DNA from: Octopus sinensis
Taxonomy: Eukaryota
Reading direction: 5' to 3'
Length of the DNA stretch: 64,000 bases
Assembly: GCF_006345805.1 (NCBI RefSeq)
Contig: NC_043007.1
Location: 60,698,001-60,762,000 of the forward strand
How positions within the stretch are numbered: position 1 is the stretch's first letter; the number at the start of each line of letters is the position of its first letter. A model generated the notes under the pieces. The model did not search any database. It was not told the DNA's origin and saw only the letters and a program-made list of their open reading frames with translations. The position numbers were made by a program, and so were the translations under genes. Of this stretch, positions 8,451 to 58,891 are shown piece after piece.

Positions 8451-9359
8451 CTACTGAGATTATGGTAATCTATAAAGAAGCATATATTTAATCACCAAAG
8501 GGTGCACACATGATAACAATTGTATAACATTTTAAAGAAATATAAGTTCTAACAATTATTTGTTTCCTATATATCACAATATTACAAAAACAATTAATGG
8601 TGTCTTAGCCAGTATGGTAAAATCCATTTACATAAGCAATGAATCCCTGTCATTGCAATCTTTAATCTTTGTCTGATTATAACTGCATCTCAGTTTCTAC
8701 TTAAAACTGCTATTTTACTGCTATTTATTCTTTTGTAGAATAAGGAAACAGCTTCAGGTTTTGCTTAAAAGGTACAATGCTTTGCTAATGGAAAGCTCTA
8801 GTTATAAAAGATAGTAGACACAGCACTCAATCCTTATCATTTCACCTCTTTTTTCCATGCTTGCATGGACTGGATCAGTCTTCTCTAGCAAGGTACCTTA
8901 CACCTTTGTGAAATTCAACATCTAAAGTTAGCTTTCAACATTTGTTCCTCTCTCAAGTTCTTTCTACTTGGTTTACTCAGCAATTCTGCAGCCATCCCTC
9001 ATGTGCATGTGTCTATATCAGTGCAGTTATCTCTCTTGCACACAACAGCCAATTCTTCTAGTAGAACATAACTTGTTTTTTCCCAGCCTTTGTATAAAAC
9101 ATCATACAATCTGCTATTCACTTCTAGAGAGGATTCTTTTGTTGCCAACAGAAAATAACAGCTCCCTCAACTTTTTTCACTATGCCATTATCCTAGTTCC
9201 TACACTGTCCCAACACTCAGCTCCTAACTATTAGGTCATTAAGGTAGCAGATGTTGTCAACCACTTCTAGCAAGTCTTCTAAGCATCTGAAAGAAAATCT
9301 ACCTCAATGACTTCTGTCTGAACCTGAAAATATGGAAAAAGTGTTTGTGTATGTGCATA

Positions 9360-12150
9360 AGACCCAAAATAACGTGGTGGTGGAACAATATTGTTGACTG
9401 GGCTATTAGACAAAAGAAACAGGCTTGGAAGGCTTGGAAGAACGAGGGTAGCAGGGAAGTGTATCAGACTGCCAGAAGGGAAGCTAGGAGACAGGTCTAT
9501 CTAGCCAGAGGGGAAGCAGATAAGAGAAAATTTGCCAATGTCCTGCGCCGTGAGGATGAAAGACTTGAGGCATTTCGTGTTGCAAGACAGTGTGTGAGAG
9601 AGAATCGTGATGTGGTAGGAGAGAAATGTGTTTGCAAGGATGACGGTTCACTTGCGCTAAATGAGGATGCAAAGAGAGAGGCTTGGAGACGCCACTATGA
9701 AAGGTTGCTGAATGAGGAAAATGAATGGGATAAAGAGAGTCTGCCGAATGTTGACCCAACAGAGGGACCAGCTATCCGAGTTGATAGTTCCGTGGTAGCT
9801 AAGGCAATTAGAAGCATGAAGACAGGGAAAGCCCCAGGCCCATCAGGAATTACTGCAGAGATGCTCAAAATATCTGGTAGTGTCGGCTATAGCATAGTCA
9901 CCCGTATAGTTAACCAGGTGATACACGAAGGAGTCATACCCAATGACTGGTGTAGCAGCATAATAGTCAACTGCTACAAAGGTAAAGGTGATGCCCTAGA
10001 TACAAATAACTACAGGGGCATCAAGCTGTTGGATCAGGTAATGAAGGTTACGGAGAGGGTTATAGCCCAATTAATTAGAGAGAGAGTAAGCTTAGATGAT
10101 ATTCAGTTTGGGTTCGTGCCAGGGAAAAGTACCACTGATGCTATATTCCTGGTAAGACAGCTGCAGGAGAAATACCTAGCCAAAGGTAAGCCCTTGTACC
10201 TGGCTTTTGTTGACTTGGAGAAAGCCTTTGACAGGGTCCCCCGATCCCTTATCTGGTGGTCAATGAGGAAACTAGGGATAGATGAATGGTTAGTGAGAGC
10301 TGTGCGTGCCATGTACAGAGACGCTGCTAGTAAGGTGAGGGTAGGCAACGAGTACAGTGAAGAATTCCGGGTAGAGGTTGGGGTCCACCAAGGTTCAGTC
10401 CTCAGCCCCCTCCTATTTATCATAGTCCTCCAGGCAATAATGGAAGAATTCAAGACAGGATGCCCCTGGGAGCTCCTCTATGCTGATGACCTTGCTCTAA
10501 TTGCTGAGTCACTATCAGAACTGGAGGAGAAGTTTCAGGTGTGGAAACAAGGATTAGAATCGAAGGGCCTTAGAATCAACCTAGCCAAAACCAAAGTCCT
10601 AATTAGTAGGAAGGTGGACCAACCACAAACGACTTCAGGTAGATGGCCCTGCTCGATCTGTAAAAAAGGTGTAGGTAGAAACTCTATAAGGTGCACCAAG
10701 TGTAAGCTATGGACACATAAGAGGTGCAGCAATGTCAAAGGTAGGCTAACTGGGAAGATAGTTTTCGTATGTGGCAGATGCTCAGGAGAAATAAACTCTG
10801 GAAACGTGCAGAGACCAACTTCTACCACGTTCCAGGGAGACAAACTAGAAGTAGTTGATAGCTTCCGCTACCTAGGAGACCAAGTCAGTAGTGGGTGTGG
10901 GTGTGCTGAAAGTGTAACGGCTAGAGTAAGAATAGCCTGGGCAAAGTTTAGAGAGCTCTTACCCCTGCTGGTGACAAAAGGCCTCTCGCTCAGAGTAAAA
11001 GGCAGACTGTATGATGCATGTGTACGTACAGCCATGCTACATGGTAGTGAAACATGGGCCGTGACTGCTGAGGATATGCGTAAGCTCGCAAGAAATGAAG
11101 CCAGTATGCTCCGATGGATGTGTAATGTCAGTATTCATAATCGTCAGAGTGTAAGTACCTTGAGAGAAAAGTTGAACCTAAGAAGCGTCAGTTGTGGTGT
11201 GCAAGAGAGACGGCTGCGCTGGTATGGTCATATGACGAGAATGGCTGAAGATAGTTGTGTGCAAAAGTGCTACACCCTAGCAGTTGAGGGAACCTGTGGA
11301 AGAGGTAGACCCAGGAAAACCTGGGACGAAGTGGTGAAGCACGACCTTCGAACTTTAGGTCTCACCAAGGAAATGACTAGAGACCGAGACCTATGGAAGT
11401 ATGCTGTGCGTGAGAAGACCCGGCAAGACTAGTCAGGCCATAACCCGTGGCCCCTACCTGGGACGTAGTAAGTCCACCTGTGCATACCTTCCTTCTTGTG
11501 ACACTTGTGAAGACCTGTTGAGGCAAGTGAAAATCAAATCAAATCAAATCAAAAAATTAAACAAAATCAAAATAGATGAACATCAATGGAATTTGTATCT
11601 TTGTGGTACCATCCAAACGTAGCCGTAGCCAGTGCCGCACCGACTGGCCTCCATGCTGTGGGCACGTAACAATCACCATCCGATCGTGGCCGATCGCCAG
11701 CCTCATCTGGCTCCTGTGTCGGTGGCACATAAAAAACACCATCCGAGCATGGTCGTCTGCTAGCCTTGTCTGGCACCTGGGTCGGTGGCACATAAAAACA
11801 CCATCCGAGCGTGGCCGTTCGCCAGCCTCGTCTGGCACCTGTGTCAGTGGCACATAAAAACACCATCCGACCGTGGCCGTTCGCCATCCTCGTCTGGCAC
11901 CTGTGTCGGTGGCACATAAAAAACACCATCTGAGCGTGGCCGTTCGCCAGCCTCGTCTGGCACCTGTGTCGGTGGCACATAAAATCACCCACTACACTCT
12001 CGGAGTGGTTGGTGTTAGGAAGGGCATCCAGCAGTAGAAACACTGCCAGATCTGACTGGCCTGGTGCAGCCTTCGGGCTCCCCAGACCCCAGTCGAACCG
12101 TCCAACCCATGCTAGCATGGAAAGCGGACGTTAAATGATGATGATGATGA
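9360..12150 (+). mobile_element. RTE-clade LINE, young 5'-truncated copy (RT ORF 9345-11432, no endonuclease) in SLC35E3 intron 3
   Basis: RT motifs DLEKAFDRVPR, GVHQGSVLSPLLF, LYADD; C-terminal RLRWYGH...GRGRPRKTW. 3'UTR ends ...aggaagggcatccagc...ggacgttaaa(tga)n. Confidence 0.95.
11670..11990 (+). repeat. ~62-bp tandem repeat in the RTE 3'UTR (5 units; 3 units in the copy at ~55362-55550)
   Basis: Unit caccatccgagcgtggccgttcgccagcctcgtctggcacctgtgtcggtggcacataaaaa(a). Confidence 0.92.
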
Positions 12151-20999: not shown

Positions 21000-22740
<1,741 letters not shown>

Positions 22741-24429
22741 TGCTGTGCTTGAGAATACATATCAAGCTAAGAAAAATTGTGGTTGTCAATGTTTACAGGC
22801 AAGTTCCCTATATCCTTCTACAGCTGAGCGATTCTAATCTTGCAGACTCATGGGTACTGATGCTATGTAAAAAGTATCCATGTTGGTGCAATGTAGAAGC
22901 ACCCATGCCAATGCTGCATAAAGGCATCCAGTATACTCTGTTAAGTGGATGGCATTAGGAAGGATATCCAGCCATAGAAACCATACTAAAACAGCCTGGG
23001 CATCTCTTCAGCTGACCAGCTCCTGTGAAACTGTTCATCCCATGCCAGCATGGAAAATGGACATTAAATGATGATGATGACGAATTATATCTATTTCGAT
23101 AATGACACTACAAAGGTTACTTGCCAAAGGCTGTTATGCCAAATGCCAGTAGCTAGTGTGTGAGAATGTGTGTTTGGCAAGAGGAGAAAATGTAAATCTT
23201 CATGTTGGGCAAGGCGGTCTTTTAACATGAGCTCAAGGTAGCATAACTACCTGTTGACCAATAATACCTCTGGTTTGTACTTCATGTGCATGTCAATTTA
23301 TTACAATCATTCAGCGTGAAAGTGCATGGAATTTTCCATTGCTCTTAATGTTCCCACAAATGTACCAGGACACCAACTGGCTAAAATGTAAGTTAACATC
23401 ACCTGATATGTTGTAGTCTTTGCCTGTTACAGGGCTGACATTGTTTCAAATGCTAAGCACTGCAACACATCTGTTTATGGGCGATAAAATAAAGTGCCAG
23501 TCAAGTACTGGATTCAATAAACAGTAATCCCTTTAATATCTCAGATGTTATGTTCCAAAAACACCCGCAATTGGTGAAAATCTACAAAGTAGAAACAGTA
23601 CTGTATTTTTTTAGAATTATTTTTATAATTTGTACATGCTTATTTTATTATAAATGCAAAACAACACCATGGAGGAATTGACGTAAGCTTAAATAATAAA
23701 CTGCAATAGGTGAACCATGATATGGTGAGGGATTACTGTAATGACTGTTCCTTCCCCACTTCAGAAGTTGTGACTTAGTGCTCTGTAAGAAAGCAGTCAA
23801 TTTCATTCAATTTAATGTTACATTTTCAATGAGATAAGTGAATTTGGTTCTCTCTAACAAGTAACTCAATTCTAGGTACAGTTTTAAGAGGGGCACTCCT
23901 GTATAAAATTCTCATTTGAGAATCATGCACAAAATCTATGTTGAGTTATAATCTTTGTTAACAAACTTGCTGAAAATTTAGTTCTCCATTAAATTCCAGT
24001 GTTTTCAAAAACCTTACATATCCCTGCATGCATGCATGTATGTTTGTACGTATGTATCTATATATGTATGTATGTTAAGTTATATTAAGTTATATCTCCA
24101 TCTGGAGAAATTAAGTTATATTTCCAAACTTTTCCATTTTTTACTACAACAATCTACTTACCATCACCTTCAGTTCAAATGATTTCACCTTCACTCTTAC
24201 CTAATATTTGCATATCATAAGTGTTGTTCACATGCAACTTAAGACACCTCATGAAAAACCTGCAATGCTTCCATGAACAAAAACTATGCAAACATTCTCC
24301 AATGGAGCAGCCAATCCATCTTGTTACTTTCAACAGCATAAAGTACACAACAAAGAAACTGGCTTGAATCTTACCACATCTACTCAGTGACATTATGGAC
24401 AATCAAAGTTATTACAACTACAAGGTTTC

Positions 24430-45446: not shown

Positions 45447-45792
45447 TATTTACACACACACACACCAGCATACCTGTGTCATGAAATATGCAGAGTTTTA
45501 TTAATGATAGAATATGAGATAAACCATTAATAATTGTCAGCAATCTAGTAAGTATATGTACATACAAAGAATTGAATCACTTGAACAATCAGATACGATT
45601 ATAATGTGTGAATATACACACACACGCACATCTGTACATATACATATATATGTACATATAAATACACACGTATATATATATACACCTATATACATATATA
45701 TACACACACACAGATGCCACCACAAAGTATATTAACATACATTTATATACACATATAAATGCACAGACATATCTCTCTCTCTCTTGCATACA

Positions 45793-45827
<35 letters not shown>

Positions 45828-46059
45828 TTATACTCATATTCATATATACCTATGGATATGCATAGATATACATGTGTGTATGCATGTGTGAGTATATGAA
45901 TTATGCATGCATGTATGTTTGTTTACATTTTTTAGAAATCAGTAAAACATGTTATCCTTTACACTTGGAAAAGGAAATAGGGCCTTGTATCAGAAATGGT
46001 AAAAATTGGAAAATGGACTAAAGAAAAAAGAGAAAAATGAAAGTACATATCTATATCTA

Positions 46060-46094
<35 letters not shown>

Positions 46095-47960
46095 ATGCAT
46101 GCATGCATTTTCTTGTTCTGTAAAAATTTCTTTCAAAATATTTCTGAAAACTTTAAACATGCTGCATGTTCTGCTTATCATGTATTAGGTATGCCAATCA
46201 CGATGTGAGGTCTATTAGTGATAATGAAAACTTGCCTGATTCTAAATTTAAGGCAATTTCTTTTTAAAAAACAAATACTACTCCTTTTCATTATTCACAT
46301 TGTCAATATCACAATATGTAACAAAATGCAAACTTATACTTTATTTACAGGAAAGAGTTCAATTATCCAAAAGAAACATTGCATTAAGAATCATAACAAC
46401 AGTAATATCAATGATGAGGTTTTAAATAATAATCCTACTTAAGAGCAGCTAAAAAAATTGATTTCTAAGGAAAAGGATGTGAGATTATGTGCTATGCTTT
46501 TCTCAAGACAAACTGTTGACAAACAAAGTCAAATCAGTTAACAACTGTAAAAAATCAAACAATTTAGTTGGTAAAATATATTGATAGTGCTTTCTCCATT
46601 AAAACCTGTGTGTGAGCCTCAATGTGGTTGTTCAACCTGATAAAATAGCAACCAAATCTCCTCCACATTATACCCTGCTCTCTTAAATGAAGGACCCATT
46701 ATATAATGTAGTCATCTTAGATGCACTATGCTTGATATATGCACGGAGAGTCATGGCTGATGCCTTTCATCAGAACTCTGCTTGATCAAAGCAAATAACA
46801 AAACAATAAAAATGGTGTCAAGTATTTGTTAATACTAAATATTTTGATACACCAAAAGATTTCACACAACTATTAAAAACACTTATTTCTCGGAAAAAAA
46901 ACAACAACCATCACCTACCCTATTTGAAACTAACAAAACATATTTAGAAAAATGAATGTTATTTGGGTTGAGTATTTGCAAAATTTAAACACTATAGTAC
47001 AGCTGAAAGGGTGTAACCTATTAATATTACAAAAATAAATTCAATAAAGTTAATATAAAAACAATTTTCTTTTTTTAACTCTGAAAATGGAATATTACTT
47101 TATCTCTGACTGAAGAACAACCACGATTGTTTAGCTTTTGGTTGGCCAGTATTGAACAGATATATGATTCTAACTATAACTATCCTACCTTTTCACAGAC
47201 AATGCATATTGGTGGATGGTAGAATTCTGATGATGACAGGGATACAGTTGTTTGACGAGCTAAGTGGATGAACATTCCACAGACATGGATATCTTTAAAG
47301 TAATTCTCAGGCAAAATCAGTGTGACATAGGCTTCTACAGTTTCCAGCTACTTATATTTACTCACAGATTATAAGTTGACCTGCAGTTAGAAAATGACAT
47401 TTGCCCAAAATACCATATAGTGGAATCAAACCTGAAAACTTGTGGTTCTAAAGCAAACCATTCAGATATACTACTTCTACAGACAGTGTATATAGAGCTC
47501 TACATCATCCAATGCATCCTTTCTTTAAGACAGAGGTTATGATTTGAGAAAGGTTTCAATGTTTTTTCTAGCAAGATGAGCAACCACAAAGAGGCTCCTT
47601 CAACTATTGTAGCTACATTACACATCAATGGATCACAAAACAAGAATTTGTTCTTTTACTTACAGCATATTTTGTGTTATTTCTGAAGCAATGGGAAATA
47701 ATATTTATTTGTTTAATGTATTAGAAAATTATTATAGATCAACCTTGTTACCCTTCGAATGATATATTTAACCGATCTACAACAACTTTCTTTAACAAGA
47801 AACTAATAAATTAATTATTTCTTATGTTTTCTGGAGGTAGAATGTTACTTTCATTTGTTCAAGTATCCATGTCTTAATCCATTTCCTGTACAAGACTCAA
47901 CAAGTGATTAATTAAAATAAATTTGTAATTTGCACAAGTATGAGGTTTTAAATGTCATCA

Positions 47961-49454
47961 TTATGGTATCCAGGTGATAACTTCTGTGATCTTTGACTGT
48001 CTATGATTTTGAGCGGCTATGGATTCGCATAAGTCTTCAACAGCATAAAAACTGTCAAAATTTTCACAATTGTTCTCTTCTAAGAATCTTCTCACCGTTG
48101 ACAGAGCAAGTCCAACATCTGTTGTAGAGACAGGTAGCATCACATCTTTATCATCTTCATCATTGCTGTTGTTACTATCTGTTGATTTTGCATCATCATT
48201 CATGAATGAGGCAACCAGTTCTTCATATGTTGGGATACTGTAACACTCCAGATCATCATCTTGGGCTACATACTCTTCAAACTGCTCTTTTGTCAACATA
48301 GTAGGAGGGACTACCACATCTTCTTCAGCAGGTGGAGTGTCAACACATGTAAAACCAGCTTTCTGGAAACAACTGATTATTGTAGAAGTCTTCAAATTGT
48401 TCCATGATTTTGCAATTAAATGAAAAGCATCCAATAATGTGATTTTCTTGGCATTTGCTTTAATCTCTGGATGACCATTAATGTCAAGAATAAGATTTCT
48501 GACCAAGGCACTTCTATATAGTGATTTCAAAGCTTTTATAATGCCTTGGTTGCATGGTTGTTTTACTTTTATTATTTTTGATGGAAAAAACATCAGTTTG
48601 ACTTGTTTGAGATTTGTAATTGCTGGGTGGGCAGTACAACTATCAACAAGTAATACAATTTTTCTTTTCTTTCGAGTCAGCTCTCTGTCAAATTCTCTCA
48701 GCCATGTAGTAAATATCTCTACAGTCATCAAAGCGTTTTTACTGTGTTTGTAGGTCACCGGAAGTGTTTTCCCATTGAGGCTTCTGGGGTCTTTATTTTT
48801 GCCAATCACTAATAATTTTCTTTTGTCATTTCCTGACATATTGGATGCCCCCATAATTGTAACTCTATCTTTGTAATTTTTGGTTCTGCTCTTTGTCTCT
48901 GTCTTGGAGGTAAGCGTAACATCTGGAAGGGCTCTGTAGAACAATCCAGTTTCACCTGCAATGTAGATGTCATCGGGATTATAAGTCTGTAGAATCTCAG
49001 GTAATACTGTACGTGTCCAGTTATCAACTGCATCTTTCTTCTCACAATTAAGCTTTTTGAATCTGATGTTATGTCTTACTTTCCATCGAGATAACCATCC
49101 ACTTGTAGGATTGAACTCTGCTCTGTTTAGATGCTCTGCTAAATCTTTGGCCTTTTCCGACAGAATAGGTCCTGATAAAGGAATGCCTCTGGACTTGGCA
49201 TTGTTGAACCATTGAGATAATGCCCCCTCTACATCAGCATCTTTTCCAGATCTTTGCCTTTTTCTCTTTGGATTGGCATTAGATCGATAGTTTGCTATAA
49301 TTTCTTCTTTCTTTGCGGTCAGTCTGGATATCTGGGATTGTGAACATCCCAGTTTCTTTGCCACTTCTGTTTGGGACATCTTCTGCCCCAGTAGAATAAC
49401 TGCTTCATACTGGTCAGCGATTGACAGATCGTTTCTTTTCCTCTTGGTTGTCAT
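47961..49454 (-). CDS. pogo/Tigger-derived TIGD-like protein (psq HTH + CENP-B HTH + DDE_1-like domain), probably domesticated
   Basis: Uninterrupted 497-codon ORF from ATG. HTH region (VAKKLGCSQSQISR), CENP-B-type ALSQWF...GIPLSGPILSEKA...GWLSRWKVRHNI. Triad positions read IAGETG (D->G), LVDSC (D), QPCNQG (D->N), with 30-residue spacing between the last two. Confidence 0.85.
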   Translation of the reverse strand: MTTKRKRNDLSIADQYEAVILLGQKMSQTEVAKKLGCSQSQISRLTAKKEEIIANYRSNANPKRKRQRSGKDADVEGALSQWFNNAKSRGIPLSGPILSEKAKDLAEHLNRAEFNPTSGWLSRWKVRHNIRFKKLNCEKKDAVDNWTRTVLPEILQTYNPDDIYIAGETGLFYRALPDVTLTSKTETKSRTKNYKDRVTIMGASNMSGNDKRKLLVIGKNKDPRSLNGKTLPVTYKHSKNALMTVEIFTTWLREFDRELTRKKRKIVLLVDSCTAHPAITNLKQVKLMFFPSKIIKVKQPCNQGIIKALKSLYRSALVRNLILDINGHPEIKANAKKITLLDAFHLIAKSWNNLKTSTIISCFQKAGFTCVDTPPAEEDVVVPPTMLTKEQFEEYVAQDDDLECYSIPTYEELVASFMNDDAKSTDSNNSNDEDDKDVMLPVSTTDVGLALSTVRRFLEENNCENFDSFYAVEDLCESIAAQNHRQSKITEVITWIP

Positions 49455-49739
49455 TTTTTTTTGTTTTTGTCTTCTCTAAACCACTCAATTGAATAAATAT
49501 AATTTGAATATCGATTTATAAGAGCCAGAAGGTGACAGCTTACTCCAAGCTTGGTATGATCAAGTCCATTACTTATGTACATCTAATTTATCTTCCACCC
49601 GGTAGAAGCTATTTCATTATCAATACATATCATCTGTTGGCATGAAGATCATTTGAATTATCAACTGAGGTTTTGCCATATCCCATTCATATTTTCCAGT
49701 TACCCAGACTTAACAAGATCCATAGGCCCATCCATAAGC

Positions 49740-51700
49740 CCCAACATCGACTTTCATATACTTTGAAATAACGATAACTTGGGTTACGCGAATTAAGAAA
49801 ATTCAGTTGCCTCAATCGCCGGTTCACGAAATAGATAATGAAAATAACAAAAAACGTCCATTCACCGCTTTGATTCAAAACTACTGCTTTACAAATTTTA
49901 TCTACAACAAAGATTTTTTGAAGAAATTGACTACGCAGCGGGACCAGAAACAAAATATAAAAGGAATCGAACTTCAACAGTCTTTAAATGTTTTGATATT
50001 GCAAGATTAACTTCGATTTACTTCCTGGTTTGACTATTGTCAGTTTAATTCATCATAAAACAAGCTTCCACAGTCATTTTATGCATAGAAAATCAAATAA
50101 ATGGTTATTTTTATGCTACATTTTGTTTTGTGTTACTTAAAATTCGAATAAATCTTATACAATTAATCGGAATTAATTCCGATGAAATGGCCCTACGTTT
50201 CTTTTAACGACTCGAATTTCAAACACAAAAATGTACTTGCACTTTTGATTAATCGTGCTTCGATGAGGTTCAGAATAATACAAAAATAATAATGCCTAAG
50301 CTAGATAAACTAATTTTTTTTCTTAATGTCTGCATTACAAAAAAAAAATAAAAAAGCTATAACATCCTATATGGAGAAATTACATTCTGACAGAAAGTTT
50401 TGTATTTGGAAATAAATTATAGAAACTTTCTCTCACCAATCCACGTTGTCTTTCCACAGGTATCACAAGTCGCTTTCTTACACATTATGAAAATTTTCGT
50501 GTTTTGTTTCTTCCAAGGTCCCGAATATTATATTTATAAGTGTCAAAAGTCTCAACTTTCCCCCAGCAACTCAAAAGCCTCCGAAATCTACAGGAACAGA
50601 TTTGAAACCGCAGTGGACATATTTTTCTACGTTAAAAGAAATAGTTTCACCTATTGGCCTCCTTATAAAGGAATGTTTCGTAATTATGTTAAGAAAATTA
50701 ATTGCTTTTCATTAATTTCTATACAAATTATAAATACTGTTTCATTTACTTTTGTAAATTTTCGAAGTAATTAAACACCATAAGAAAAAAATTGTAATAC
50801 ATTAAAAATAGTTTCAGTTATTGTTCTCCTTGCAACTGAATGCTTCATAATTATATTATGGAAATTTTCTTTTCATAAATTTATGGATAAATTATAAATA
50901 TTATTTCGTTTATTTCTGTAAATTAAACACCTTGGGCAAAAAATAAACAAAATTAATTTATTATGTTTGCAAGCAGTATAACGAACTGTGTATAAGGATT
51001 ATGGCGTAGTAATACGTAATCTCAGCCAGAAGGATAGGGTGGAGATCCTTCCGTCTTAATCAATATGACTATAATATATAAGAATGCTTATTAAATAGCT
51101 TCAACTAAAATAATAACAGTGAATAACAATTTCTCATAATAGCACAACTTCAGAGTGTATTATGAATAAAGCTTATAGATTTTGTAAATACAGCATTTCC
51201 TTTCTAGGCAACTACCGATTCCTATTCTTTTTTTTTTTTTCGCGGCAGAACGAACTTCTTTCAGTTTATAAATTTTATTATAGTTATAGATGTGGTCAAA
51301 TTGAAACGTAATATACATGTTATCTCTTTTCTCGTTAAATATTTATACGGCATTCGTAAATGCACCATAACTTCTGTTCGTTTGGATTGTAGATTGGCAG
51401 AATCGTTAGAGCATAGGTGAAAATGTGTTGCGATATTTCTTTCGACTTTTTACTCTTGGAATTCGTTTCTCGCTGAGGTCATCTTTGACTTTAATCTGTA
51501 GCAAGATGCGAACTTGCGTTGCCATACATCCTTTCGGGGTCGATAAAATGAAAGAACAGTCAAGAATTAACCCCCTCCCTTCATAACTGCGAGTCTTGTG
51601 TCTAAATTCGAAACCCTTATGTATAAGTGCAATGAGAAGGAACAGGAAAACGGGAAAGGTAGGTATGTTGGGGGAACCCCCTCCAACAATTGAAGAAAAA
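49740..51700. promoter_or_regulatory. CpG-retaining promoter-like region for the microprotein/TIGD unit
   Basis: Local CG enrichment judged by eye, the TATAAAT motif, and a perfect palindrome atcggaattaattccgat at about 50166-50183. Confidence 0.45.
50437..50485 (-). CDS. Cys/His-rich microprotein, exon 1 (MCKKATCDTCGKTTWI-G)
   Basis: ATG at 50485-50483, 49 nt, donor ATT G|gtgaga (phase 1). TATAAAT on the minus strand at 50538-50532, inside a CpG-retaining region. Confidence 0.8.
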
Positions 51701-55715: not shown

Positions 55716-56694
55716 ATATATATGCATACATATATACAACGGGCTTCTTTCAGTTTCCATCTACCAAATCCACTCACAAGGCTTTGGTCGGCCCGAGGCT
55801 ATAGTAGAAGACACTTGCCCAAGGTGCCACACAGTGCGACTGAACCTGGAACCATGTGGTTGGTAAGCAAGCTACTTGCCACACAGCCACTCCTGCGCCT
55901 GTGTTGGGTTGTTCATGTTGAATATGTGGTTCTATGTTGGCTGACTGGCACAAGTTAACTGCTAGCTATCTGCTTGTTTCTTGAGAGTTCGCCTTGTAAT
56001 GGTTATCTGCAGTCCCTTGACAGATTGCCGATTGATGGCTATCTGCCTCCTGTCATATGTCTGACTGTATTTATAATGGTCATGATAGCTAGAAGGACAG
56101 ACATACCACAGGAGTAATTTCTACCTATGTAGGTCGCCTCCTGTCCATTTGATCCCTAAATGACTCATTTCAGGTCATAGGTCAAAGAGAAATCTATCCA
56201 TCACTTTTGGACAGGACAAAGAAATTTCTTTTGTGCCTGTTTAGCTAGTGGTGGATCAGACAAGCGAGAATCTTTAGATTCAGTTTCGAATCTCAGCCCG
56301 GAAAAAGAAGTGTTAGTTTTTACATATACATATATACTTATTTAGAAAGGGACACATCGCATTCAATTAAATAATAAATAATATATTATATATATATATA
56401 TACATACATGGATATAATATGGGTACAGGGCATCACCAAGGGTGCAAATAACATTTATTGCAGTGTTGAATAAAGTGAGGAACCCGAAGAGTGGTTATAT
56501 CAACCAAAGCTGGGATTAAATCATTTCCTCACAGGAAAATGAAGAAGTGACAGAACATTGTGTGGTTGTTTAAAACAAAAAGTTCATTACCTGTGAGTGG
56601 CAATCATCATCAATTAGTTTGTATCGATTGTATCGCCAGGGTTCATATAATATAACTGTCATACAGTGTATCTGTTTGAAAAATACAAAGACAA

Positions 56695-56749
<55 letters not shown>

Positions 56750-58891
56750 GGTAGCACCAATAATTATAAAATACATAAGACACTATATGAATAAATGGCA
56801 GACAGTGGTACAGCTCCAAACAAAAGAGGGACTCGTGAAAACTAAAGCCATCCCCATTAGAAGAGGAATATTCCAGGGAGACACACTCTCTCCACTCCTT
56901 TTCTGCTTGGCACTGACACCTGTATCTGATATGCTAAATAGAGCCGATTGCAGATACAAATGTTACGGCAAAACAATCAGCCACCTTTTATATATGGATG
57001 ACCTAAAACTATATGCTACAAATGATAAACAGCTGGAAACACTACTACAGACAGTATATGGATTTACTGAAGATGGATTTACTGAAGAAATAGATATGAA
57101 ATTTGGATTAGAAAAATGCGCCAAAGCAACCCTGAAAAGAGGAAAACTAGTTAAGAGCAACAACATCACACTAGATAAAGCCAATGAAATAAGAAAATTA
57201 GACCAAAGCCAAACATACAAATATTTAGGAATCCATGGACTAGATATGATACAACACACACAAATGAAAGAGAAAATAAAGAAAGAATACTAAAGACAAG
57301 TTATATCAAAACTAAAAACAGCTCAATGCTAAAAATAAGATAATAGGTATTAACACTTTAGCCATCCTAGTTATAAGTTACAGCTACAATAACCTTAACT
57401 AGACACTAAATGAACTAACCAAAATAGACTGGAAAACCAGAAAAATAATGACAGGATAGGATGCACCACCCAAAATCTGACATATAAAGGCTATATATAC
57501 AACGTATAGAAGGTGGTAGAGGCCTTATACAGCTGGAAAACTATTATAAAATAACCACCATAGGACTGCAAAAATACCTACTTCAGAAGCAAGGAAAACT
57601 GATACAAATAGCCACAAAACACAAGCAAAACAAAAAATTGTTCTCAGTATTTAAGGAAGCTGACAAATACAAACAAGAAATCATACTACCTAACAAATAT
57701 AAAGAAGAAAAAGAAACAACAAAAGCTATAAAACAACTGAAAACCAAACTAAAACTAGAACAGCAACGGACCATGATAAAACGATGGTAAGAAAAGCTCC
57801 TTCATGGCAAATACTGGACTAAACTAAATGCAAAAGAAATAGACAGAGAAAAATCCCAGCAGTGGTTGAGAAGCTCAGGACTCAAAGCAGAGACGGAGGG
57901 ATTTTTAATTGCAGCACAAGACCAAAGCCTCCCCACCAGAAATTACCAAAAACATATAATGAAAAGAAACATAACAAGTAACTTCAGAATATGTGGAGAT
58001 GGACAAGAAACAATAAATCATATTATCTCTGGCTGCCAAGTCCTGGCTAAGAAGGAATATACTCACAGACATGATAGAGTTGGGACCTACATACATATTT
58101 CTTACTACCCACAAGGGGCTAAACACAGAGGGGACAAACAAGGACAGACAAATGGATTAAGTTGATTACATCGACCTCAGTGTGTAACTGGTATTTAATT
58201 TATTGACCCCGAAAGGATGAAAAGCAAAGTTGACCTCAGCAGAATTTGAACTCAGAACTTAACGGCAGACGAAATACAGCTACGCATCTCGCCCGGCGTG
58301 GTAACGTTTCTACCAACTTGCCGCCTTCTATGTTGGGACTTACATACACTGGAAGCTCTGCCAACACTATGGAATAACAAAAGAAAAAAGATGATATAGG
58401 CACACTCCAGAAAAAGGTCACAGAAAACGAGAAAGCAACCATACTTTGGGATATGCCAATTCACACAGATAGAGAAATTAAGGTCAATAGGCCAGATATA
58501 ATTGTCAGAGATCATGAAGAAAAAAAATGCTTTCTAATTGATGTGCCAGTACCAGCAGATGACAACGTTTCTCTCAAAGAAATGGAGAAACTTTCAAAAT
58601 ACAAAGACCTGGAAATAGAGGTAACTCGAATGTGGAATCTAAAAACAAACAATTCCTATCATAGTAGGCGCATTAGGTATGATAAAAAAAATATTCAGAC
58701 AAATACATAACAAAAACACCAGGACTTACAAATATATATAACATACAGAAAATTGCACTACTGGGCACTGCACACATCCTATGCAAAACACTTTCAATAC
58801 AGTAACCATCACAACAAACCACAGCACATACCCAAGGCACACAGAGCTGTGCTCGGTAGTGAAGTGAAAGCACAATATGAAAATAAAACTA

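What the first reader, a model, noticed from the sequence alone, without database searches (positions are those of the whole stretch)
47961..49454. Catalytically dead but fully open pogo/Tigger transposase: candidate cephalopod domesticated gene
Every other DNA transposon here is riddled with stops, but this ORF is intact for 497 codons. It has lost two triad residues (NADETG->IAGETG at 48956-48954; QPLDQG->QPCNQG at 48551-48549), other conserved DDE residues (AWMT->ALMT), and apparently a few residues by in-frame deletion after the CENP-B HTH. The DNA-binding domains are retained and there is an acidic tail. This is the pattern of CENP-B/TIGD/JRK-type domestication and suggests a DNA-binding regulator.
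Basis: partly seen in the sequence, partly recalled or inferred. Interest (0 to 1): 0.7.

Follow-up and report, generated by a model that had tools for sequence, protein, structure and literature searches.

The report
Domesticated pogo transposase gene in Octopus
This is a single-copy octopus gene derived from a pogo/Tigger-type "jumping gene" enzyme: it has lost its DNA-cutting residues, has been kept intact by selection in at least four octopus species, and is a real but fairly ordinary example of a host recruiting a transposase, probably as a DNA-binding protein.

Summary
Window 47961-49454 (-) is an intact 497-codon ORF with CENP-B_N, HTH_Tnp_Tc5 and DDE_1 domains. Two of the three catalytic aspartates are replaced (D167G, D302N; D271 kept). 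Several other active-site motif residues are also changed, and four residues are deleted.

The window is Octopus sinensis. The same gene sits at the same locus in O. vulgaris, O. bimaculoides (XP_014772267.1) and an unidentified octopod, and all share the active-site changes. Against the most distant copy:
- dN/dS is 0.18 (p = 2e-15), and each domain is separately constrained.
- The flanks carry 28 indels; the CDS carries one, in frame (25 expected, p = 3e-10).
- The octopus locus has no terminal inverted repeats.

The closest relatives (48-54% identity) are mollusc transposons with intact triads. Two of them show TA-flanked CAGTC… inverted repeats.

In a tree the octopus gene falls among these mollusc elements, not with human TIGD4, so this is an independent domestication.

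I found no orthologue outside octopods, so "cephalopod" is not shown. The O. bimaculoides copy is already listed as a transposon-derived "CENPB" factor (Mukherjee & Moroz 2023), though without this analysis. Function as a DNA-binding regulator is inferred.

Verdict: new member of a known kind, with modest interest.

The parts
47961..49454 (-). Single-exon CDS of the domesticated transposase gene, 497 aa plus stop
   Evidence: ORF listing. It is the identical product of the gene called in O. sinensis GCA_006345805.1 CM016869.1.
49296..49445 (-). CENP-B_N-type helix-turn-helix (aa 4-53), first half of the bipartite DNA-binding domain
   Evidence: Pfam PF04218. The AF2 model superposes on the CENP-B(1-129)-DNA complex 1hlv with target-normalised TM 0.77 and rmsd 2.9 Å. 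dN/dS for aa 1-135 is 0.06.
49053..49238 (-). HTH_Tnp_Tc5 helix-turn-helix (aa 73-134), second half of the DNA-binding domain
   Evidence: Pfam PF03221, E = 4e-15. phmmer hit to CENP-B 1hlv_A, E = 4e-11.
49242..49268 (-). Basic stretch KRKRQRSGK (aa 63-71) between the two HTH motifs, a likely nuclear localisation signal
   Evidence: Read directly from the sequence. K65 and R68 are invariant and R66 is nearly invariant in alignment A1. The NLS role is inferred.
49029..49034 (-). Junction D141/A142, where four residues present in all 15 non-octopus homologues of A1 are missing
   Evidence: Alignment A1, columns 215-218. The gap is shared by all four octopus sequences.
48360..48977 (-). RNase H-like (DDE/DDD) transposase core, aa 160-365, retained but with the active site dismantled
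   Evidence: Pfam DDE_1, E = 3e-41. Most 10-residue blocks of the AF2 core have mean pLDDT 75-96, with loops near aa 181-191 and 331-335 below 50; Foldseek matches the Mos1 and SETMAR transposase domains. dN/dS is 0.235, p = 1.4e-6.
48954..48956 (-). Codon G167, replacing the first catalytic Asp (NADETG to IAGETG)
   Evidence: This position is D in 142 of 164 relatives and G in all four octopus sequences.
48729..48731 (-). Codon L242, replacing the conserved Trp of the AWMT motif
   Evidence: This position is W in 152 of 164 relatives and L in all four octopus sequences.
48642..48644 (-). Codon D271, the second catalytic Asp, retained (LLVDSC)
   Evidence: This position is D in 149 of 164 relatives.
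48549..48551 (-). Codon N302, replacing the third catalytic Asp (QPCDQG to QPCNQG); 30 residues lie between D271 and N302
   Evidence: This position is D in 129 of 164 relatives and N in 12. The adjacent LPPNTTS motif has become FPSKIIK (48570-48587).
48120..48335 (-). Acidic, largely disordered C-terminal segment (aa 374-445)
   Evidence: 20 D/E against 3 K/R, pI 4.05. pLDDT is below 50 for aa 412-438. The segment is also present in the related transposases.
47964..47999 (-). C-terminal motif QSKITEVITWIP (aa 486-497), shared with the mollusc transposases
   Evidence: Q486 is invariant, and the …KITEFIxWIP ending occurs in most of the mollusc-type relatives of A1.
49455..50725 (-). Probable 5' leader and promoter-proximal region. 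The start of the O. bimaculoides mRNA model maps to 50725-50324.
   Evidence: The first 399 nt of the XM sequence, taken from PMC10027918 Table1, align colinearly at 94.8%. Whether the rest of the leader is spliced was not seen.

Best explanation
This is a host gene made from a pogo-superfamily transposase. In the scheme of Gao et al. 2020 it appears closest to the DD30D, pogoR/Tigger-like type. A mollusc-type element became immobilised at this locus before the sampled Octopus species diverged.

The element's ends are gone. Two of the three catalytic carboxylates and several neighbouring active-site motif residues were replaced, giving G167-D271-N302, so the protein should be unable to cut or join DNA.

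Selection has since preserved the whole 497-aa protein. It is strongest on the N-terminal bipartite CENP-B-like helix-turn-helix domain, but it also acts on the inactive RNase H-like core and on the acidic C-terminus.

The most likely mode of action is a nuclear, sequence-specific DNA-binding protein, acting as a transcription or chromatin regulator. The two HTH motifs would read DNA. The dead core and C-terminal region would serve as an oligomerisation or partner-binding scaffold, as in the CENP-B, TIGD and JRK proteins.

Shown here: the gene structure, the residue losses, orthology at a fixed locus, purifying selection, and descent from transposons that have TIRs. Inferred: loss of catalysis, nuclear localisation, DNA binding and a regulatory role.
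For: **Structure and domains.**
- Intact ORF with all three domains.
- The structure model (pLDDT 79) resembles full-length Mos1 transposase and the CENP-B DNA-binding domain.

**Active-site loss.**
- Positions D167, D302, W242, N165, N272, N293 and T295 are all replaced.
- Of 76 positions that are at least 80% conserved in 164 relatives, 12 are changed: 11 in the core and only 1 in the DNA-binding domain.
- 11 of the 12 are fixed in all four octopus sequences, so most of the changes predate their split.

**Fixed locus.**
- O. vulgaris L003 is colinear at 99.3% over 16 kb; the Logan contig L002 is colinear over 3.2 kb at 87.9%.
- The O. bimaculoides mRNA 5' end maps to the upstream flank.

**Selection (window vs L002).**
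- dS = 0.18, dN = 0.032, omega = 0.175, p = 2e-15.
- By domain: DNA-binding domain 0.06, core 0.235, C-terminus 0.16, each significant.
- Differences by codon position are 23/16/49, and dN over flank divergence is 0.29.
- The flanks carry 28 indel events in 1654 bp; the CDS carries one 3-nt indel, p = 3e-10.

**Origin.**
- The nearest relatives (48-54% identity) keep NADETG and QPCDQG.
- In Gigantopelta (L004) and an ENA contig (L005) they are bounded by 24-28-bp CAGTC… TIRs with TA duplications.
- The octopus locus has no such ends.
- In the NJ tree the octopus clade has 100% support and sits among the mollusc elements. In 300 bootstrap replicates it never joined human TIGD4 without them.

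**Precedent.** Vertebrate domesticated pogo genes have Ka/Ks of 0.055-0.207 and partly lost triads, for example TIGD6 DD30N and TIGD7 DD34N (PMC7386202).
Against: - There are no functional data. Loss of catalysis is inferred from conservation and from general knowledge of DDE enzymes.
- Asn at the third position also occurs in 12 of 164 relatives.
- Genome-wide copy number could not be measured. I could check only the window, two 21-kb loci and the protein databases.
- Expression rests on the existence of an NCBI mRNA model with a long 5' leader and on a Logan contig of unknown library type.
- Only one informative species pair was available for dN/dS. NG86 dS (0.18) exceeds flank divergence (0.11), so omega may be somewhat underestimated.
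- No candidate binding site is known. The ancestral TIR motif is not enriched in the window.
Confidence: 0.85

Rival explanations
1. It is a dead but young transposon copy whose ORF is still open by chance and will decay. The gene model is an annotation artefact.
For: NCBI names it only "tigger transposable element-derived protein 4-like". The window is rich in repeats and retroelements.
Against: The locus is shared by species separated by dS of about 0.18, and the frame is preserved. The flanks have 28 indels and the CDS has one in-frame indel (p = 3e-10). Omega is 0.18. Substitutions are enriched at third codon positions. There are no TIRs.
Confidence: 0.02
2. It is still part of a mobile element. 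Purifying selection would then reflect selection for transposition, either through a non-canonical active site or through mobilisation in trans.
For: Transposases of active families also show omega below 1 between species. D271 is retained, and Asn at the third position occurs in some relatives.
Against: The flanks are colinear between species, so inheritance is vertical at one site. There are no TIRs or TA-flanked ends. There is a single copy in the window and a single 90% cluster in the protein databases. The first catalytic Asp is Gly, and the NxDET, AWMT and LPPNTTS motifs are all altered.
Confidence: 0.02
3. It is domesticated, but its role is genome defence or chromatin organisation rather than gene regulation. 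It might bind remnants (MITEs or TIRs) of its own transposon family to silence them, or mark heterochromatin or centromeres, as proposed for CENP-B and the fission-yeast Abp1/Cbh proteins.
For: The architecture and DNA-binding-domain fold are the same as CENP-B. The strongest constraint is on the DNA-binding domain. Pogo transposases have repeatedly been domesticated into CENP-B-like proteins (PMC4231638, seen).
Against: There is no CENP-B dimerisation domain. No copies of the ancestral TIR motif occur in the window beyond chance. No closely related transposase is annotated in Octopus, so the cognate family may be extinct there. Nothing here distinguishes this role from a transcription-factor role.
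Confidence: 0.25

Closest known systems
Vertebrate TIGD6 / TIGD7 (pogo-derived domesticated genes with DD30N / DD34N triads)
   Same: They have the same CENP-B_N + HTH_Tnp_Tc5 + DDE_1 architecture from a complete transposase, carried in a single coding exon. The third Asp is replaced by Asn. Ka/Ks is about 0.17-0.21 (PMC7386202 Table 1), against 0.18 here.
   Different: This is an independent event in a different phylum. The octopus protein is 29-30% identical to them over aa 1-345 and additionally lacks the first Asp. It is known only from octopods.
Human TIGD4 (the name NCBI transfers to this gene)
   Same: The domain order and similar length are shared. Both have lost recognisable catalytic residues. 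Identity is 36% over aa 1-345.
   Different: They are not orthologous. Human TIGD4 groups with insect TIGD4-like sequences (71% bootstrap), while the octopus clade sits among the mollusc elements. In 300 bootstrap replicates the two were never joined without the mollusc elements.
Mollusc pogoR/Tigger-like transposons (for example Gigantopelta aegis JAEHGF010002990.1, locus L004 3132-6397)
   Same: They are 48-54% identical over the full length, with the same N- and C-termini, including the …KITEFIxWIP ending. They are the likely source family.
   Different: The elements keep NADETG, LLVDNC and QPCDQG, and they have 24-28-bp CAGTC… TIRs with TA duplications. The octopus gene has none of these and is fixed at one locus.
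CENP-B (mammalian centromere protein B)
   Same: It is pogo-derived with a bipartite HTH DNA-binding domain. The model superposes on 1hlv with target-normalised TM 0.77 at 28% identity. It also has an acidic region and an inactive DDE core.
   Different: The octopus protein has no CENP-B dimerisation domain. Its origin is independent, and centromere or CENP-B-box binding is untested.
The "CENPB" class of transposon-derived transcription factors catalogued in Octopus bimaculoides (Mukherjee & Moroz 2023, PMC10027918)
   Same: The O. bimaculoides orthologue XP_014772267.1 / LOC106870636 is one of the listed entries.
   Different: That catalogue is domain-based, with family-wide Ka/Ks. The word "catalytic" does not occur in its main text, and no passage I retrieved analyses locus-level orthology or the source element. 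I did not read the whole paper.

Membership tests
pogo superfamily transposase-derived protein | [quoted passage not shown] | tested here: met
   Pfam PF04218 (24.3 bits against a cutoff of 21.2) and PF03221 (55.9 bits). Match to the CENP-B DNA-binding domain by sequence and by fold.
pogo superfamily transposase-derived protein | DDE_1 RNase H-like catalytic core | tested here: met
   PF03184, 141 bits, full profile length 1-177. Foldseek matches the Mos1 and SETMAR transposase domains.
Autonomous (active) pogo/Tigger transposon | Intact D-D-x(29-56)-D catalytic triad | tested here: not met
   The triad is G167 - D271 - 30 residues - N302.
Autonomous (active) pogo/Tigger transposon | Terminal inverted repeats with a TA target-site duplication flanking the ORF | tested here: not met
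   No credible inverted repeat lies within 2.5 kb on either side. The TIR consensus of the relatives is absent. The same searches did find the TIRs in L004 and L005.
Autonomous (active) pogo/Tigger transposon | Multiple similar copies in the genome | tested here: inconclusive
   There is one copy in the 64-kb window, and one 90% cluster with one contig per species in the databases. Whole Octopus assemblies could not be searched.
Stationary domesticated transposase gene (criteria as in Gao et al. 2020) | Orthologues at a fixed, syntenic locus in several species | tested here: met
   Flanks are colinear in O. vulgaris and in the Logan octopod. The O. bimaculoides mRNA leader maps to the upstream flank. 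The gene tree matches ((sinensis, vulgaris), bimaculoides), Logan.
Stationary domesticated transposase gene (criteria as in Gao et al. 2020) | Ka/Ks significantly below 1 and the ORF preserved | tested here: met
   Omega is 0.175, p = 2e-15, and each domain is significant. Indels are excluded from the CDS, p = 3e-10.
Stationary domesticated transposase gene (criteria as in Gao et al. 2020) | Expression as a host gene | not testable with these tools
   The evidence is only indirect: an NCBI mRNA model with a leader of about 1.27 kb. No read data were available.
Vertebrate TIGD4 orthologue | Groups with TIGD4 to the exclusion of transposons and other TIGD genes | tested here: not met
   NJ tree on 351 columns. 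Octopus falls among the mollusc elements, and human TIGD4 groups with insect sequences. No bootstrap replicate out of 300 supports octopus plus TIGD4 without the mollusc elements. The method is NJ only, and the human sequences are truncated at about 364 aa.
CENP-B | C-terminal CENP-B dimerisation domain and binding to the centromeric CENP-B box | tested here: not met
   No CENP-B_dimeris hit in Pfam. DNA target binding is not testable here.

The most novel reading that the evidence does not exclude
The gene could be an octopod-specific sequence-specific regulator, born from a mollusc pogo element after octopods split from squids. It might have acquired its own set of genomic targets, for example relics of its ancestral transposon ends that were spread as regulatory sites. 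It would then contribute to lineage-specific gene regulation in the octopus nervous system or in development. This would be a transposase and transposon-derived binding-site network of the kind proposed for other domesticated transposases.
Probability: 0.12. Interest if true: 0.6.

Novelty: new member of a known kind. Interest (0 to 1): 0.33.

Why it matters
Domestication of pogo transposases into CENP-B/TIGD/JRK-type proteins is well documented in vertebrates, fission yeast and Lepidoptera. In molluscs it has been reported only in catalogue form.

This locus is a clean, well-supported invertebrate case. The likely source transposon family is still identifiable in other molluscs, and the steps can be read directly from the sequences: loss of the element ends, dismantling of the active site, then conservation of the remaining fold.

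That makes it a convenient system for asking what an inactive transposase core is kept for. It also gives octopus biologists a candidate lineage-restricted DNA-binding factor. It does not change any current view of how domestication works.

Tried and rejected
- **O. bimaculoides DNA.** Exact-protein look-up of P0001 found no contig, so dN/dS for that species was not possible. I recovered only the first 399 nt of its mRNA, from a paper supplement.
- **Source species of SRR11869394.** Two literature searches gave nothing relevant. The species, and whether the run is RNA or DNA, remain unknown.
- **Papers naming LOC106870636 / XP_014772267.** None found in main texts.
- **First bootstrap script.** It timed out. 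The first support values were artefacts of rooting, so I recomputed them as bipartitions.
- **Bacterial-type promoter/terminator scan.** It does not apply to a eukaryotic locus, so I ignored it.
- **Upstream gene as a synteny anchor.** The O. sinensis and O. vulgaris annotations place its 3' end differently. The ORFs there are uninformative, so I dropped it.
- **Small uORF in the leader as an exon of another gene.** It is followed by a GTGAGA motif, but I found no continuing frame. I left it as a passing note.
- **Public nucleotide collections.** The viral, metagenome and prokaryotic collections cannot answer a cephalopod question, so I did not scan them.
Full report
**1. What is in the sequence**

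Window 47961-49454 on the minus strand is one uninterrupted ORF of 497 codons, ATG to TAA. Stop codons make up 5.6% of codons across the six frames of the window, so an open stretch of this length has a chance probability of about 3e-13.

Pfam places three domains on it:
- CENP-B_N helix-turn-helix, aa 4-53
- HTH_Tnp_Tc5, aa 73-134, E = 4e-15
- A full-length DDE_1 transposase core, aa 195-363, E = 3e-41

The only solved structure related by sequence is the CENP-B DNA-binding domain bound to its box, 1hlv, E = 4e-11.

An AlphaFold2 model built on 42 homologues has mean pLDDT 79. It shows two three-helix bundles, an alpha/beta RNase H-like core and a partly disordered acidic tail. Foldseek matches it to full-length Mos1 mariner transposase complexes, to the SETMAR transposase domain, and to CENP-B(1-129) with target-normalised TM 0.77 and rmsd 2.9 Å.

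**2. The catalytic residues**

In alignment A1, and in a larger alignment with 164 non-octopus relatives of at least 430 aa, the three pogo triad positions map to residues 167, 271 and 302.

| Position | State in 164 relatives | Octopus |
|---|---|---|
| 167 (first Asp, NADETG) | D in 142 | G (IAGETG) |
| 271 (second Asp) | D in 149 | D (kept) |
| 302 (third Asp, QPCDQG) | D in 129, N in 12 | N |

Thirty residues separate D271 and N302, so the signature is G-D30N.

Other hallmark residues are also replaced:
- N165I, W242L (AWMT to ALMT) and N272S.
- The LPPNTTS strand has become FPSKIIK.
- Four residues present in all 15 non-octopus homologues of A1 are missing after D141.

Of 76 positions that are at least 80% conserved across the 164 relatives, 12 differ in the octopus protein. 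Eleven of these are in the core and one is in the DNA-binding domain. The damage is therefore concentrated on the active site.

The acidic tail (aa 366-497, pI 4.05) is real. It is also present in the related transposases, so it is inherited.

**3. Where the window comes from, and the orthologues**

The exact protein is encoded once on record, on Octopus sinensis chromosome CM016869.1 (GCA_006345805.1) near 60.74 Mb.

Its 90% cluster has four members:

| Member | Difference from the window protein |
|---|---|
| O. sinensis | the window protein itself |
| O. vulgaris CAI9730179.1 | 1 residue |
| O. bimaculoides XP_014772267.1 | 14 residues |
| 496-aa protein from a Logan assembly of SRR11869394 | 94.1% nucleotide identity across the CDS (88 differences), 36.5 of them estimated non-synonymous, plus one codon deleted |

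All four share G167, N302, L242 and the 4-residue deletion.

The evidence that these are the same locus is as follows:
- The O. vulgaris locus (L003) is colinear with the window locus at 99.3% over 16 kb.
- The 3.2-kb Logan contig (L002) is colinear end to end at 87.9%. This includes about 0.9 kb upstream and 0.8 kb downstream of the ORF.
- The first 399 nt of the O. bimaculoides mRNA model, taken from the supplement of PMC10027918, map colinearly at 94.8% to window 50725-50324. That lies 0.87-1.27 kb upstream of the ATG.

So this is one locus inherited vertically, not a set of independent insertions.

I could not identify the species behind SRR11869394. In the gene tree it branches outside (sinensis, vulgaris, bimaculoides).

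**4. Selection**

All figures below compare the window with L002.

| Region | dN/dS | One-sided Fisher p |
|---|---|---|
| Whole CDS | 0.175 | 2e-15 |
| DNA-binding domain | 0.06 | 4e-7 |
| Core | 0.235 | 1.4e-6 |
| C-terminus | 0.16 | 1e-4 |

- Overall dS is 0.182 and dN is 0.032.
- Differences by codon position are 23/16/49.
- Using flank divergence (JC 0.110) as the neutral yardstick instead of dS gives dN/neutral = 0.29, p = 3e-14.
- The flanks carry 28 indel events in 1654 aligned bp. That predicts about 25 in the CDS, but there is one, of 3 nt and in frame (p = 3e-10).
- That one deletion removes Q299 of the former QPxDQG motif. This suggests the catalytic motif itself is no longer protected.
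- Between O. sinensis and O. vulgaris, the CDS has 1 difference where 5.3 are expected from the flanks (p = 0.03).

One caveat applies. NG86 dS is higher than the flank divergence. Either the flanks (probable UTRs) are mildly constrained, or dS is somewhat inflated. Both estimates of omega remain far below 1.

**5. Origin**

Two database searches gave the same picture.
- The word-indexed search found nothing between the octopus cluster and 54% identity.
- The exhaustive HMMER search of 1.84 billion representatives found 15,434 relatives, again with nothing between the octopus cluster and 53% identity.

The nearest sequences (48-54% identity) include annotated proteins of the gastropod Gigantopelta aegis and the bivalves Argopecten, Pecten and Mytilus, together with unnamed ENA and Logan proteins. 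Most keep NADETG, LLVDNC and QPCDQG, and most share the C-terminal …KITEFIxWIP ending.

Two of them that I fetched are bona fide transposons:
- The Gigantopelta copy (L004 3132-6397) is bounded by TA|CAGTCAAATCCACTTAATTGGATGT and its inverted copy followed by TA.
- The ENA copy (L005) is bounded by TA|CAGTCGATTCCACTTAATCTGATA in the same arrangement.

The same search procedure finds nothing comparable around the octopus ORF. The TIR consensus has no match near the gene; the window has a single hit with 3 mismatches at 23794, which is at chance level. Only coding sequence is alignable between the elements and the octopus locus.

I built a neighbour-joining tree on 351 columns. It included the first ~364 residues of human TIGD1-4, TIGD6, TIGD7, JRK and JRKL, taken from the same supplement. 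The results were:
- The four octopus sequences form a clade with 100% support, in the arrangement ((sinensis, vulgaris), bimaculoides), Logan.
- That clade sits among the mollusc-type elements (56%) and next to the Gigantopelta element (53%).
- Human TIGD4 groups with insect TIGD4-like sequences (71%).
- Human TIGD3 groups with shark TIGD3-like sequences (94%).
- In none of 300 bootstrap replicates did octopus join human TIGD4 without the mollusc elements.

The NCBI name "TIGD4-like" is therefore a similarity label, not orthology. This is an independent domestication.

**6. How it most likely works**

Shown:
- The protein keeps a complete pogo transposase architecture.
- It has lost its ends and two of three catalytic carboxylates.
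- It is under purifying selection along its whole length, most strongly in the DNA-binding domain.

Established knowledge: DDE/DDD transposases need all three carboxylates to coordinate the catalytic metal ions, so a G-D-N site should be inactive.

Inferred:
- The protein enters the nucleus. It has basic stretches TKRKRN (aa 3-8) and KRKRQRSGK (aa 63-71).
- It binds specific DNA through the paired HTH motifs, as CENP-B does.
- It uses the inactive core and the acidic C-terminal region for oligomerisation or partner recruitment.
- Its biological role is as a transcription or chromatin regulator.

A role in binding relics of its own transposon family, or in heterochromatin or centromeres, is a live alternative that nothing here separates from the regulator role.

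**7. Comparison with what is known**

This is the same kind of event that produced the vertebrate TIGD, JRK and CENP-B genes. Gao et al. 2020 (PMC7386202) report Ka/Ks of 0.055-0.207 for those genes. They also report partly lost triads, such as TIGD6 DD30N, TIGD7 DD34N, TIGD2 DD34S and CENPBD1 DD32G. The octopus gene fits squarely in that range.

Mukherjee & Moroz 2023 (PMC10027918) already list the O. bimaculoides orthologue (LOC106870636) among seven octopus "CENPB" transposon-derived transcription factors, and they state that pogo was domesticated in the Octopus lineage. Their analysis is domain- and family-based. The word "catalytic" does not occur in their main text. No passage I retrieved addresses locus-level orthology or the source element, though I did not read the whole paper.

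I found no paper naming this gene in its main text.

**8. Verdict**

- The evidence reaches octopods, not cephalopods as a whole.
- The gene is not an orthologue of any vertebrate TIGD.
- Function is inferred.

It is a new, well-documented member of a known kind. Genome-wide copy number, expression and DNA binding remain to be tested.

Noticed in passing
window 9345-11432 (+): An intact 695-aa ORF with a reverse-transcriptase domain (RVT_1, E = 7.5e-33) and a weak PHD-finger hit. It is a retroelement ORF that is still open, so the Tigger-derived gene is not the only long open TE-type ORF in the window.
   Followed up: partly
window 56619-57293 (+): A 224-aa ORF with a partial RVT_1 match (E = 7.5e-13), probably a fragment of another retroelement. 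It lies on the opposite strand, upstream of the gene.
   Followed up: no
window 50415-50483 (-): A 22-codon upstream ORF (MCKKATCDTCGKTTWIGERKFL*) lies inside the 5' leader of the O. bimaculoides mRNA model. Its 69 nt are identical between O. sinensis and O. bimaculoides, while the surrounding 399 nt are 94.8% identical. A GTGAGA donor-like motif overlaps it. Its significance is unknown.
   Followed up: partly
L002 (Logan SRR11869394 contig), codon corresponding to window 48558-48560: In the most distant octopod copy, Q299 of the former QPxDQG catalytic motif is deleted in frame. The active-site motif therefore continues to erode while the rest of the protein is conserved.
   Followed up: yes
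window 47110-47960 and 49455-50348 compared with L002: Substitution divergence in the flanks (JC about 0.11) is lower than synonymous divergence in the CDS (NG86 dS = 0.18). Either the flanks are UTRs under some constraint, or dS is inflated by the method or by base composition.
   Followed up: partly
window 45785-45849 and 46043-46107: A (CA)n and a (TG)n microsatellite about 190 bp apart form an imperfect inverted pair. This pair dominates the inverted-repeat output for the region.
   Followed up: no
window 21411-21923 (-): A 170-aa ORF has a weak, sub-threshold match to the triose-phosphate/nucleotide-sugar transporter family (TPT, E = 1.4e-4). It may be an exon of a host SLC35-type gene.
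   Followed up: no
L004 3132-6397 (Gigantopelta aegis JAEHGF010002990.1) and L005 3350-6252 (ENA ERZ26168041 contig): These are apparently complete pogoR/Tigger-like transposons of about 3.3 and 2.9 kb. Each has an intact ~505-aa transposase ORF, 24-28-bp CAGTC… TIRs and TA duplications, so they may be recently active in molluscs. The L005 copy carries NAVETG, meaning its first Asp is lost.
   Followed up: partly
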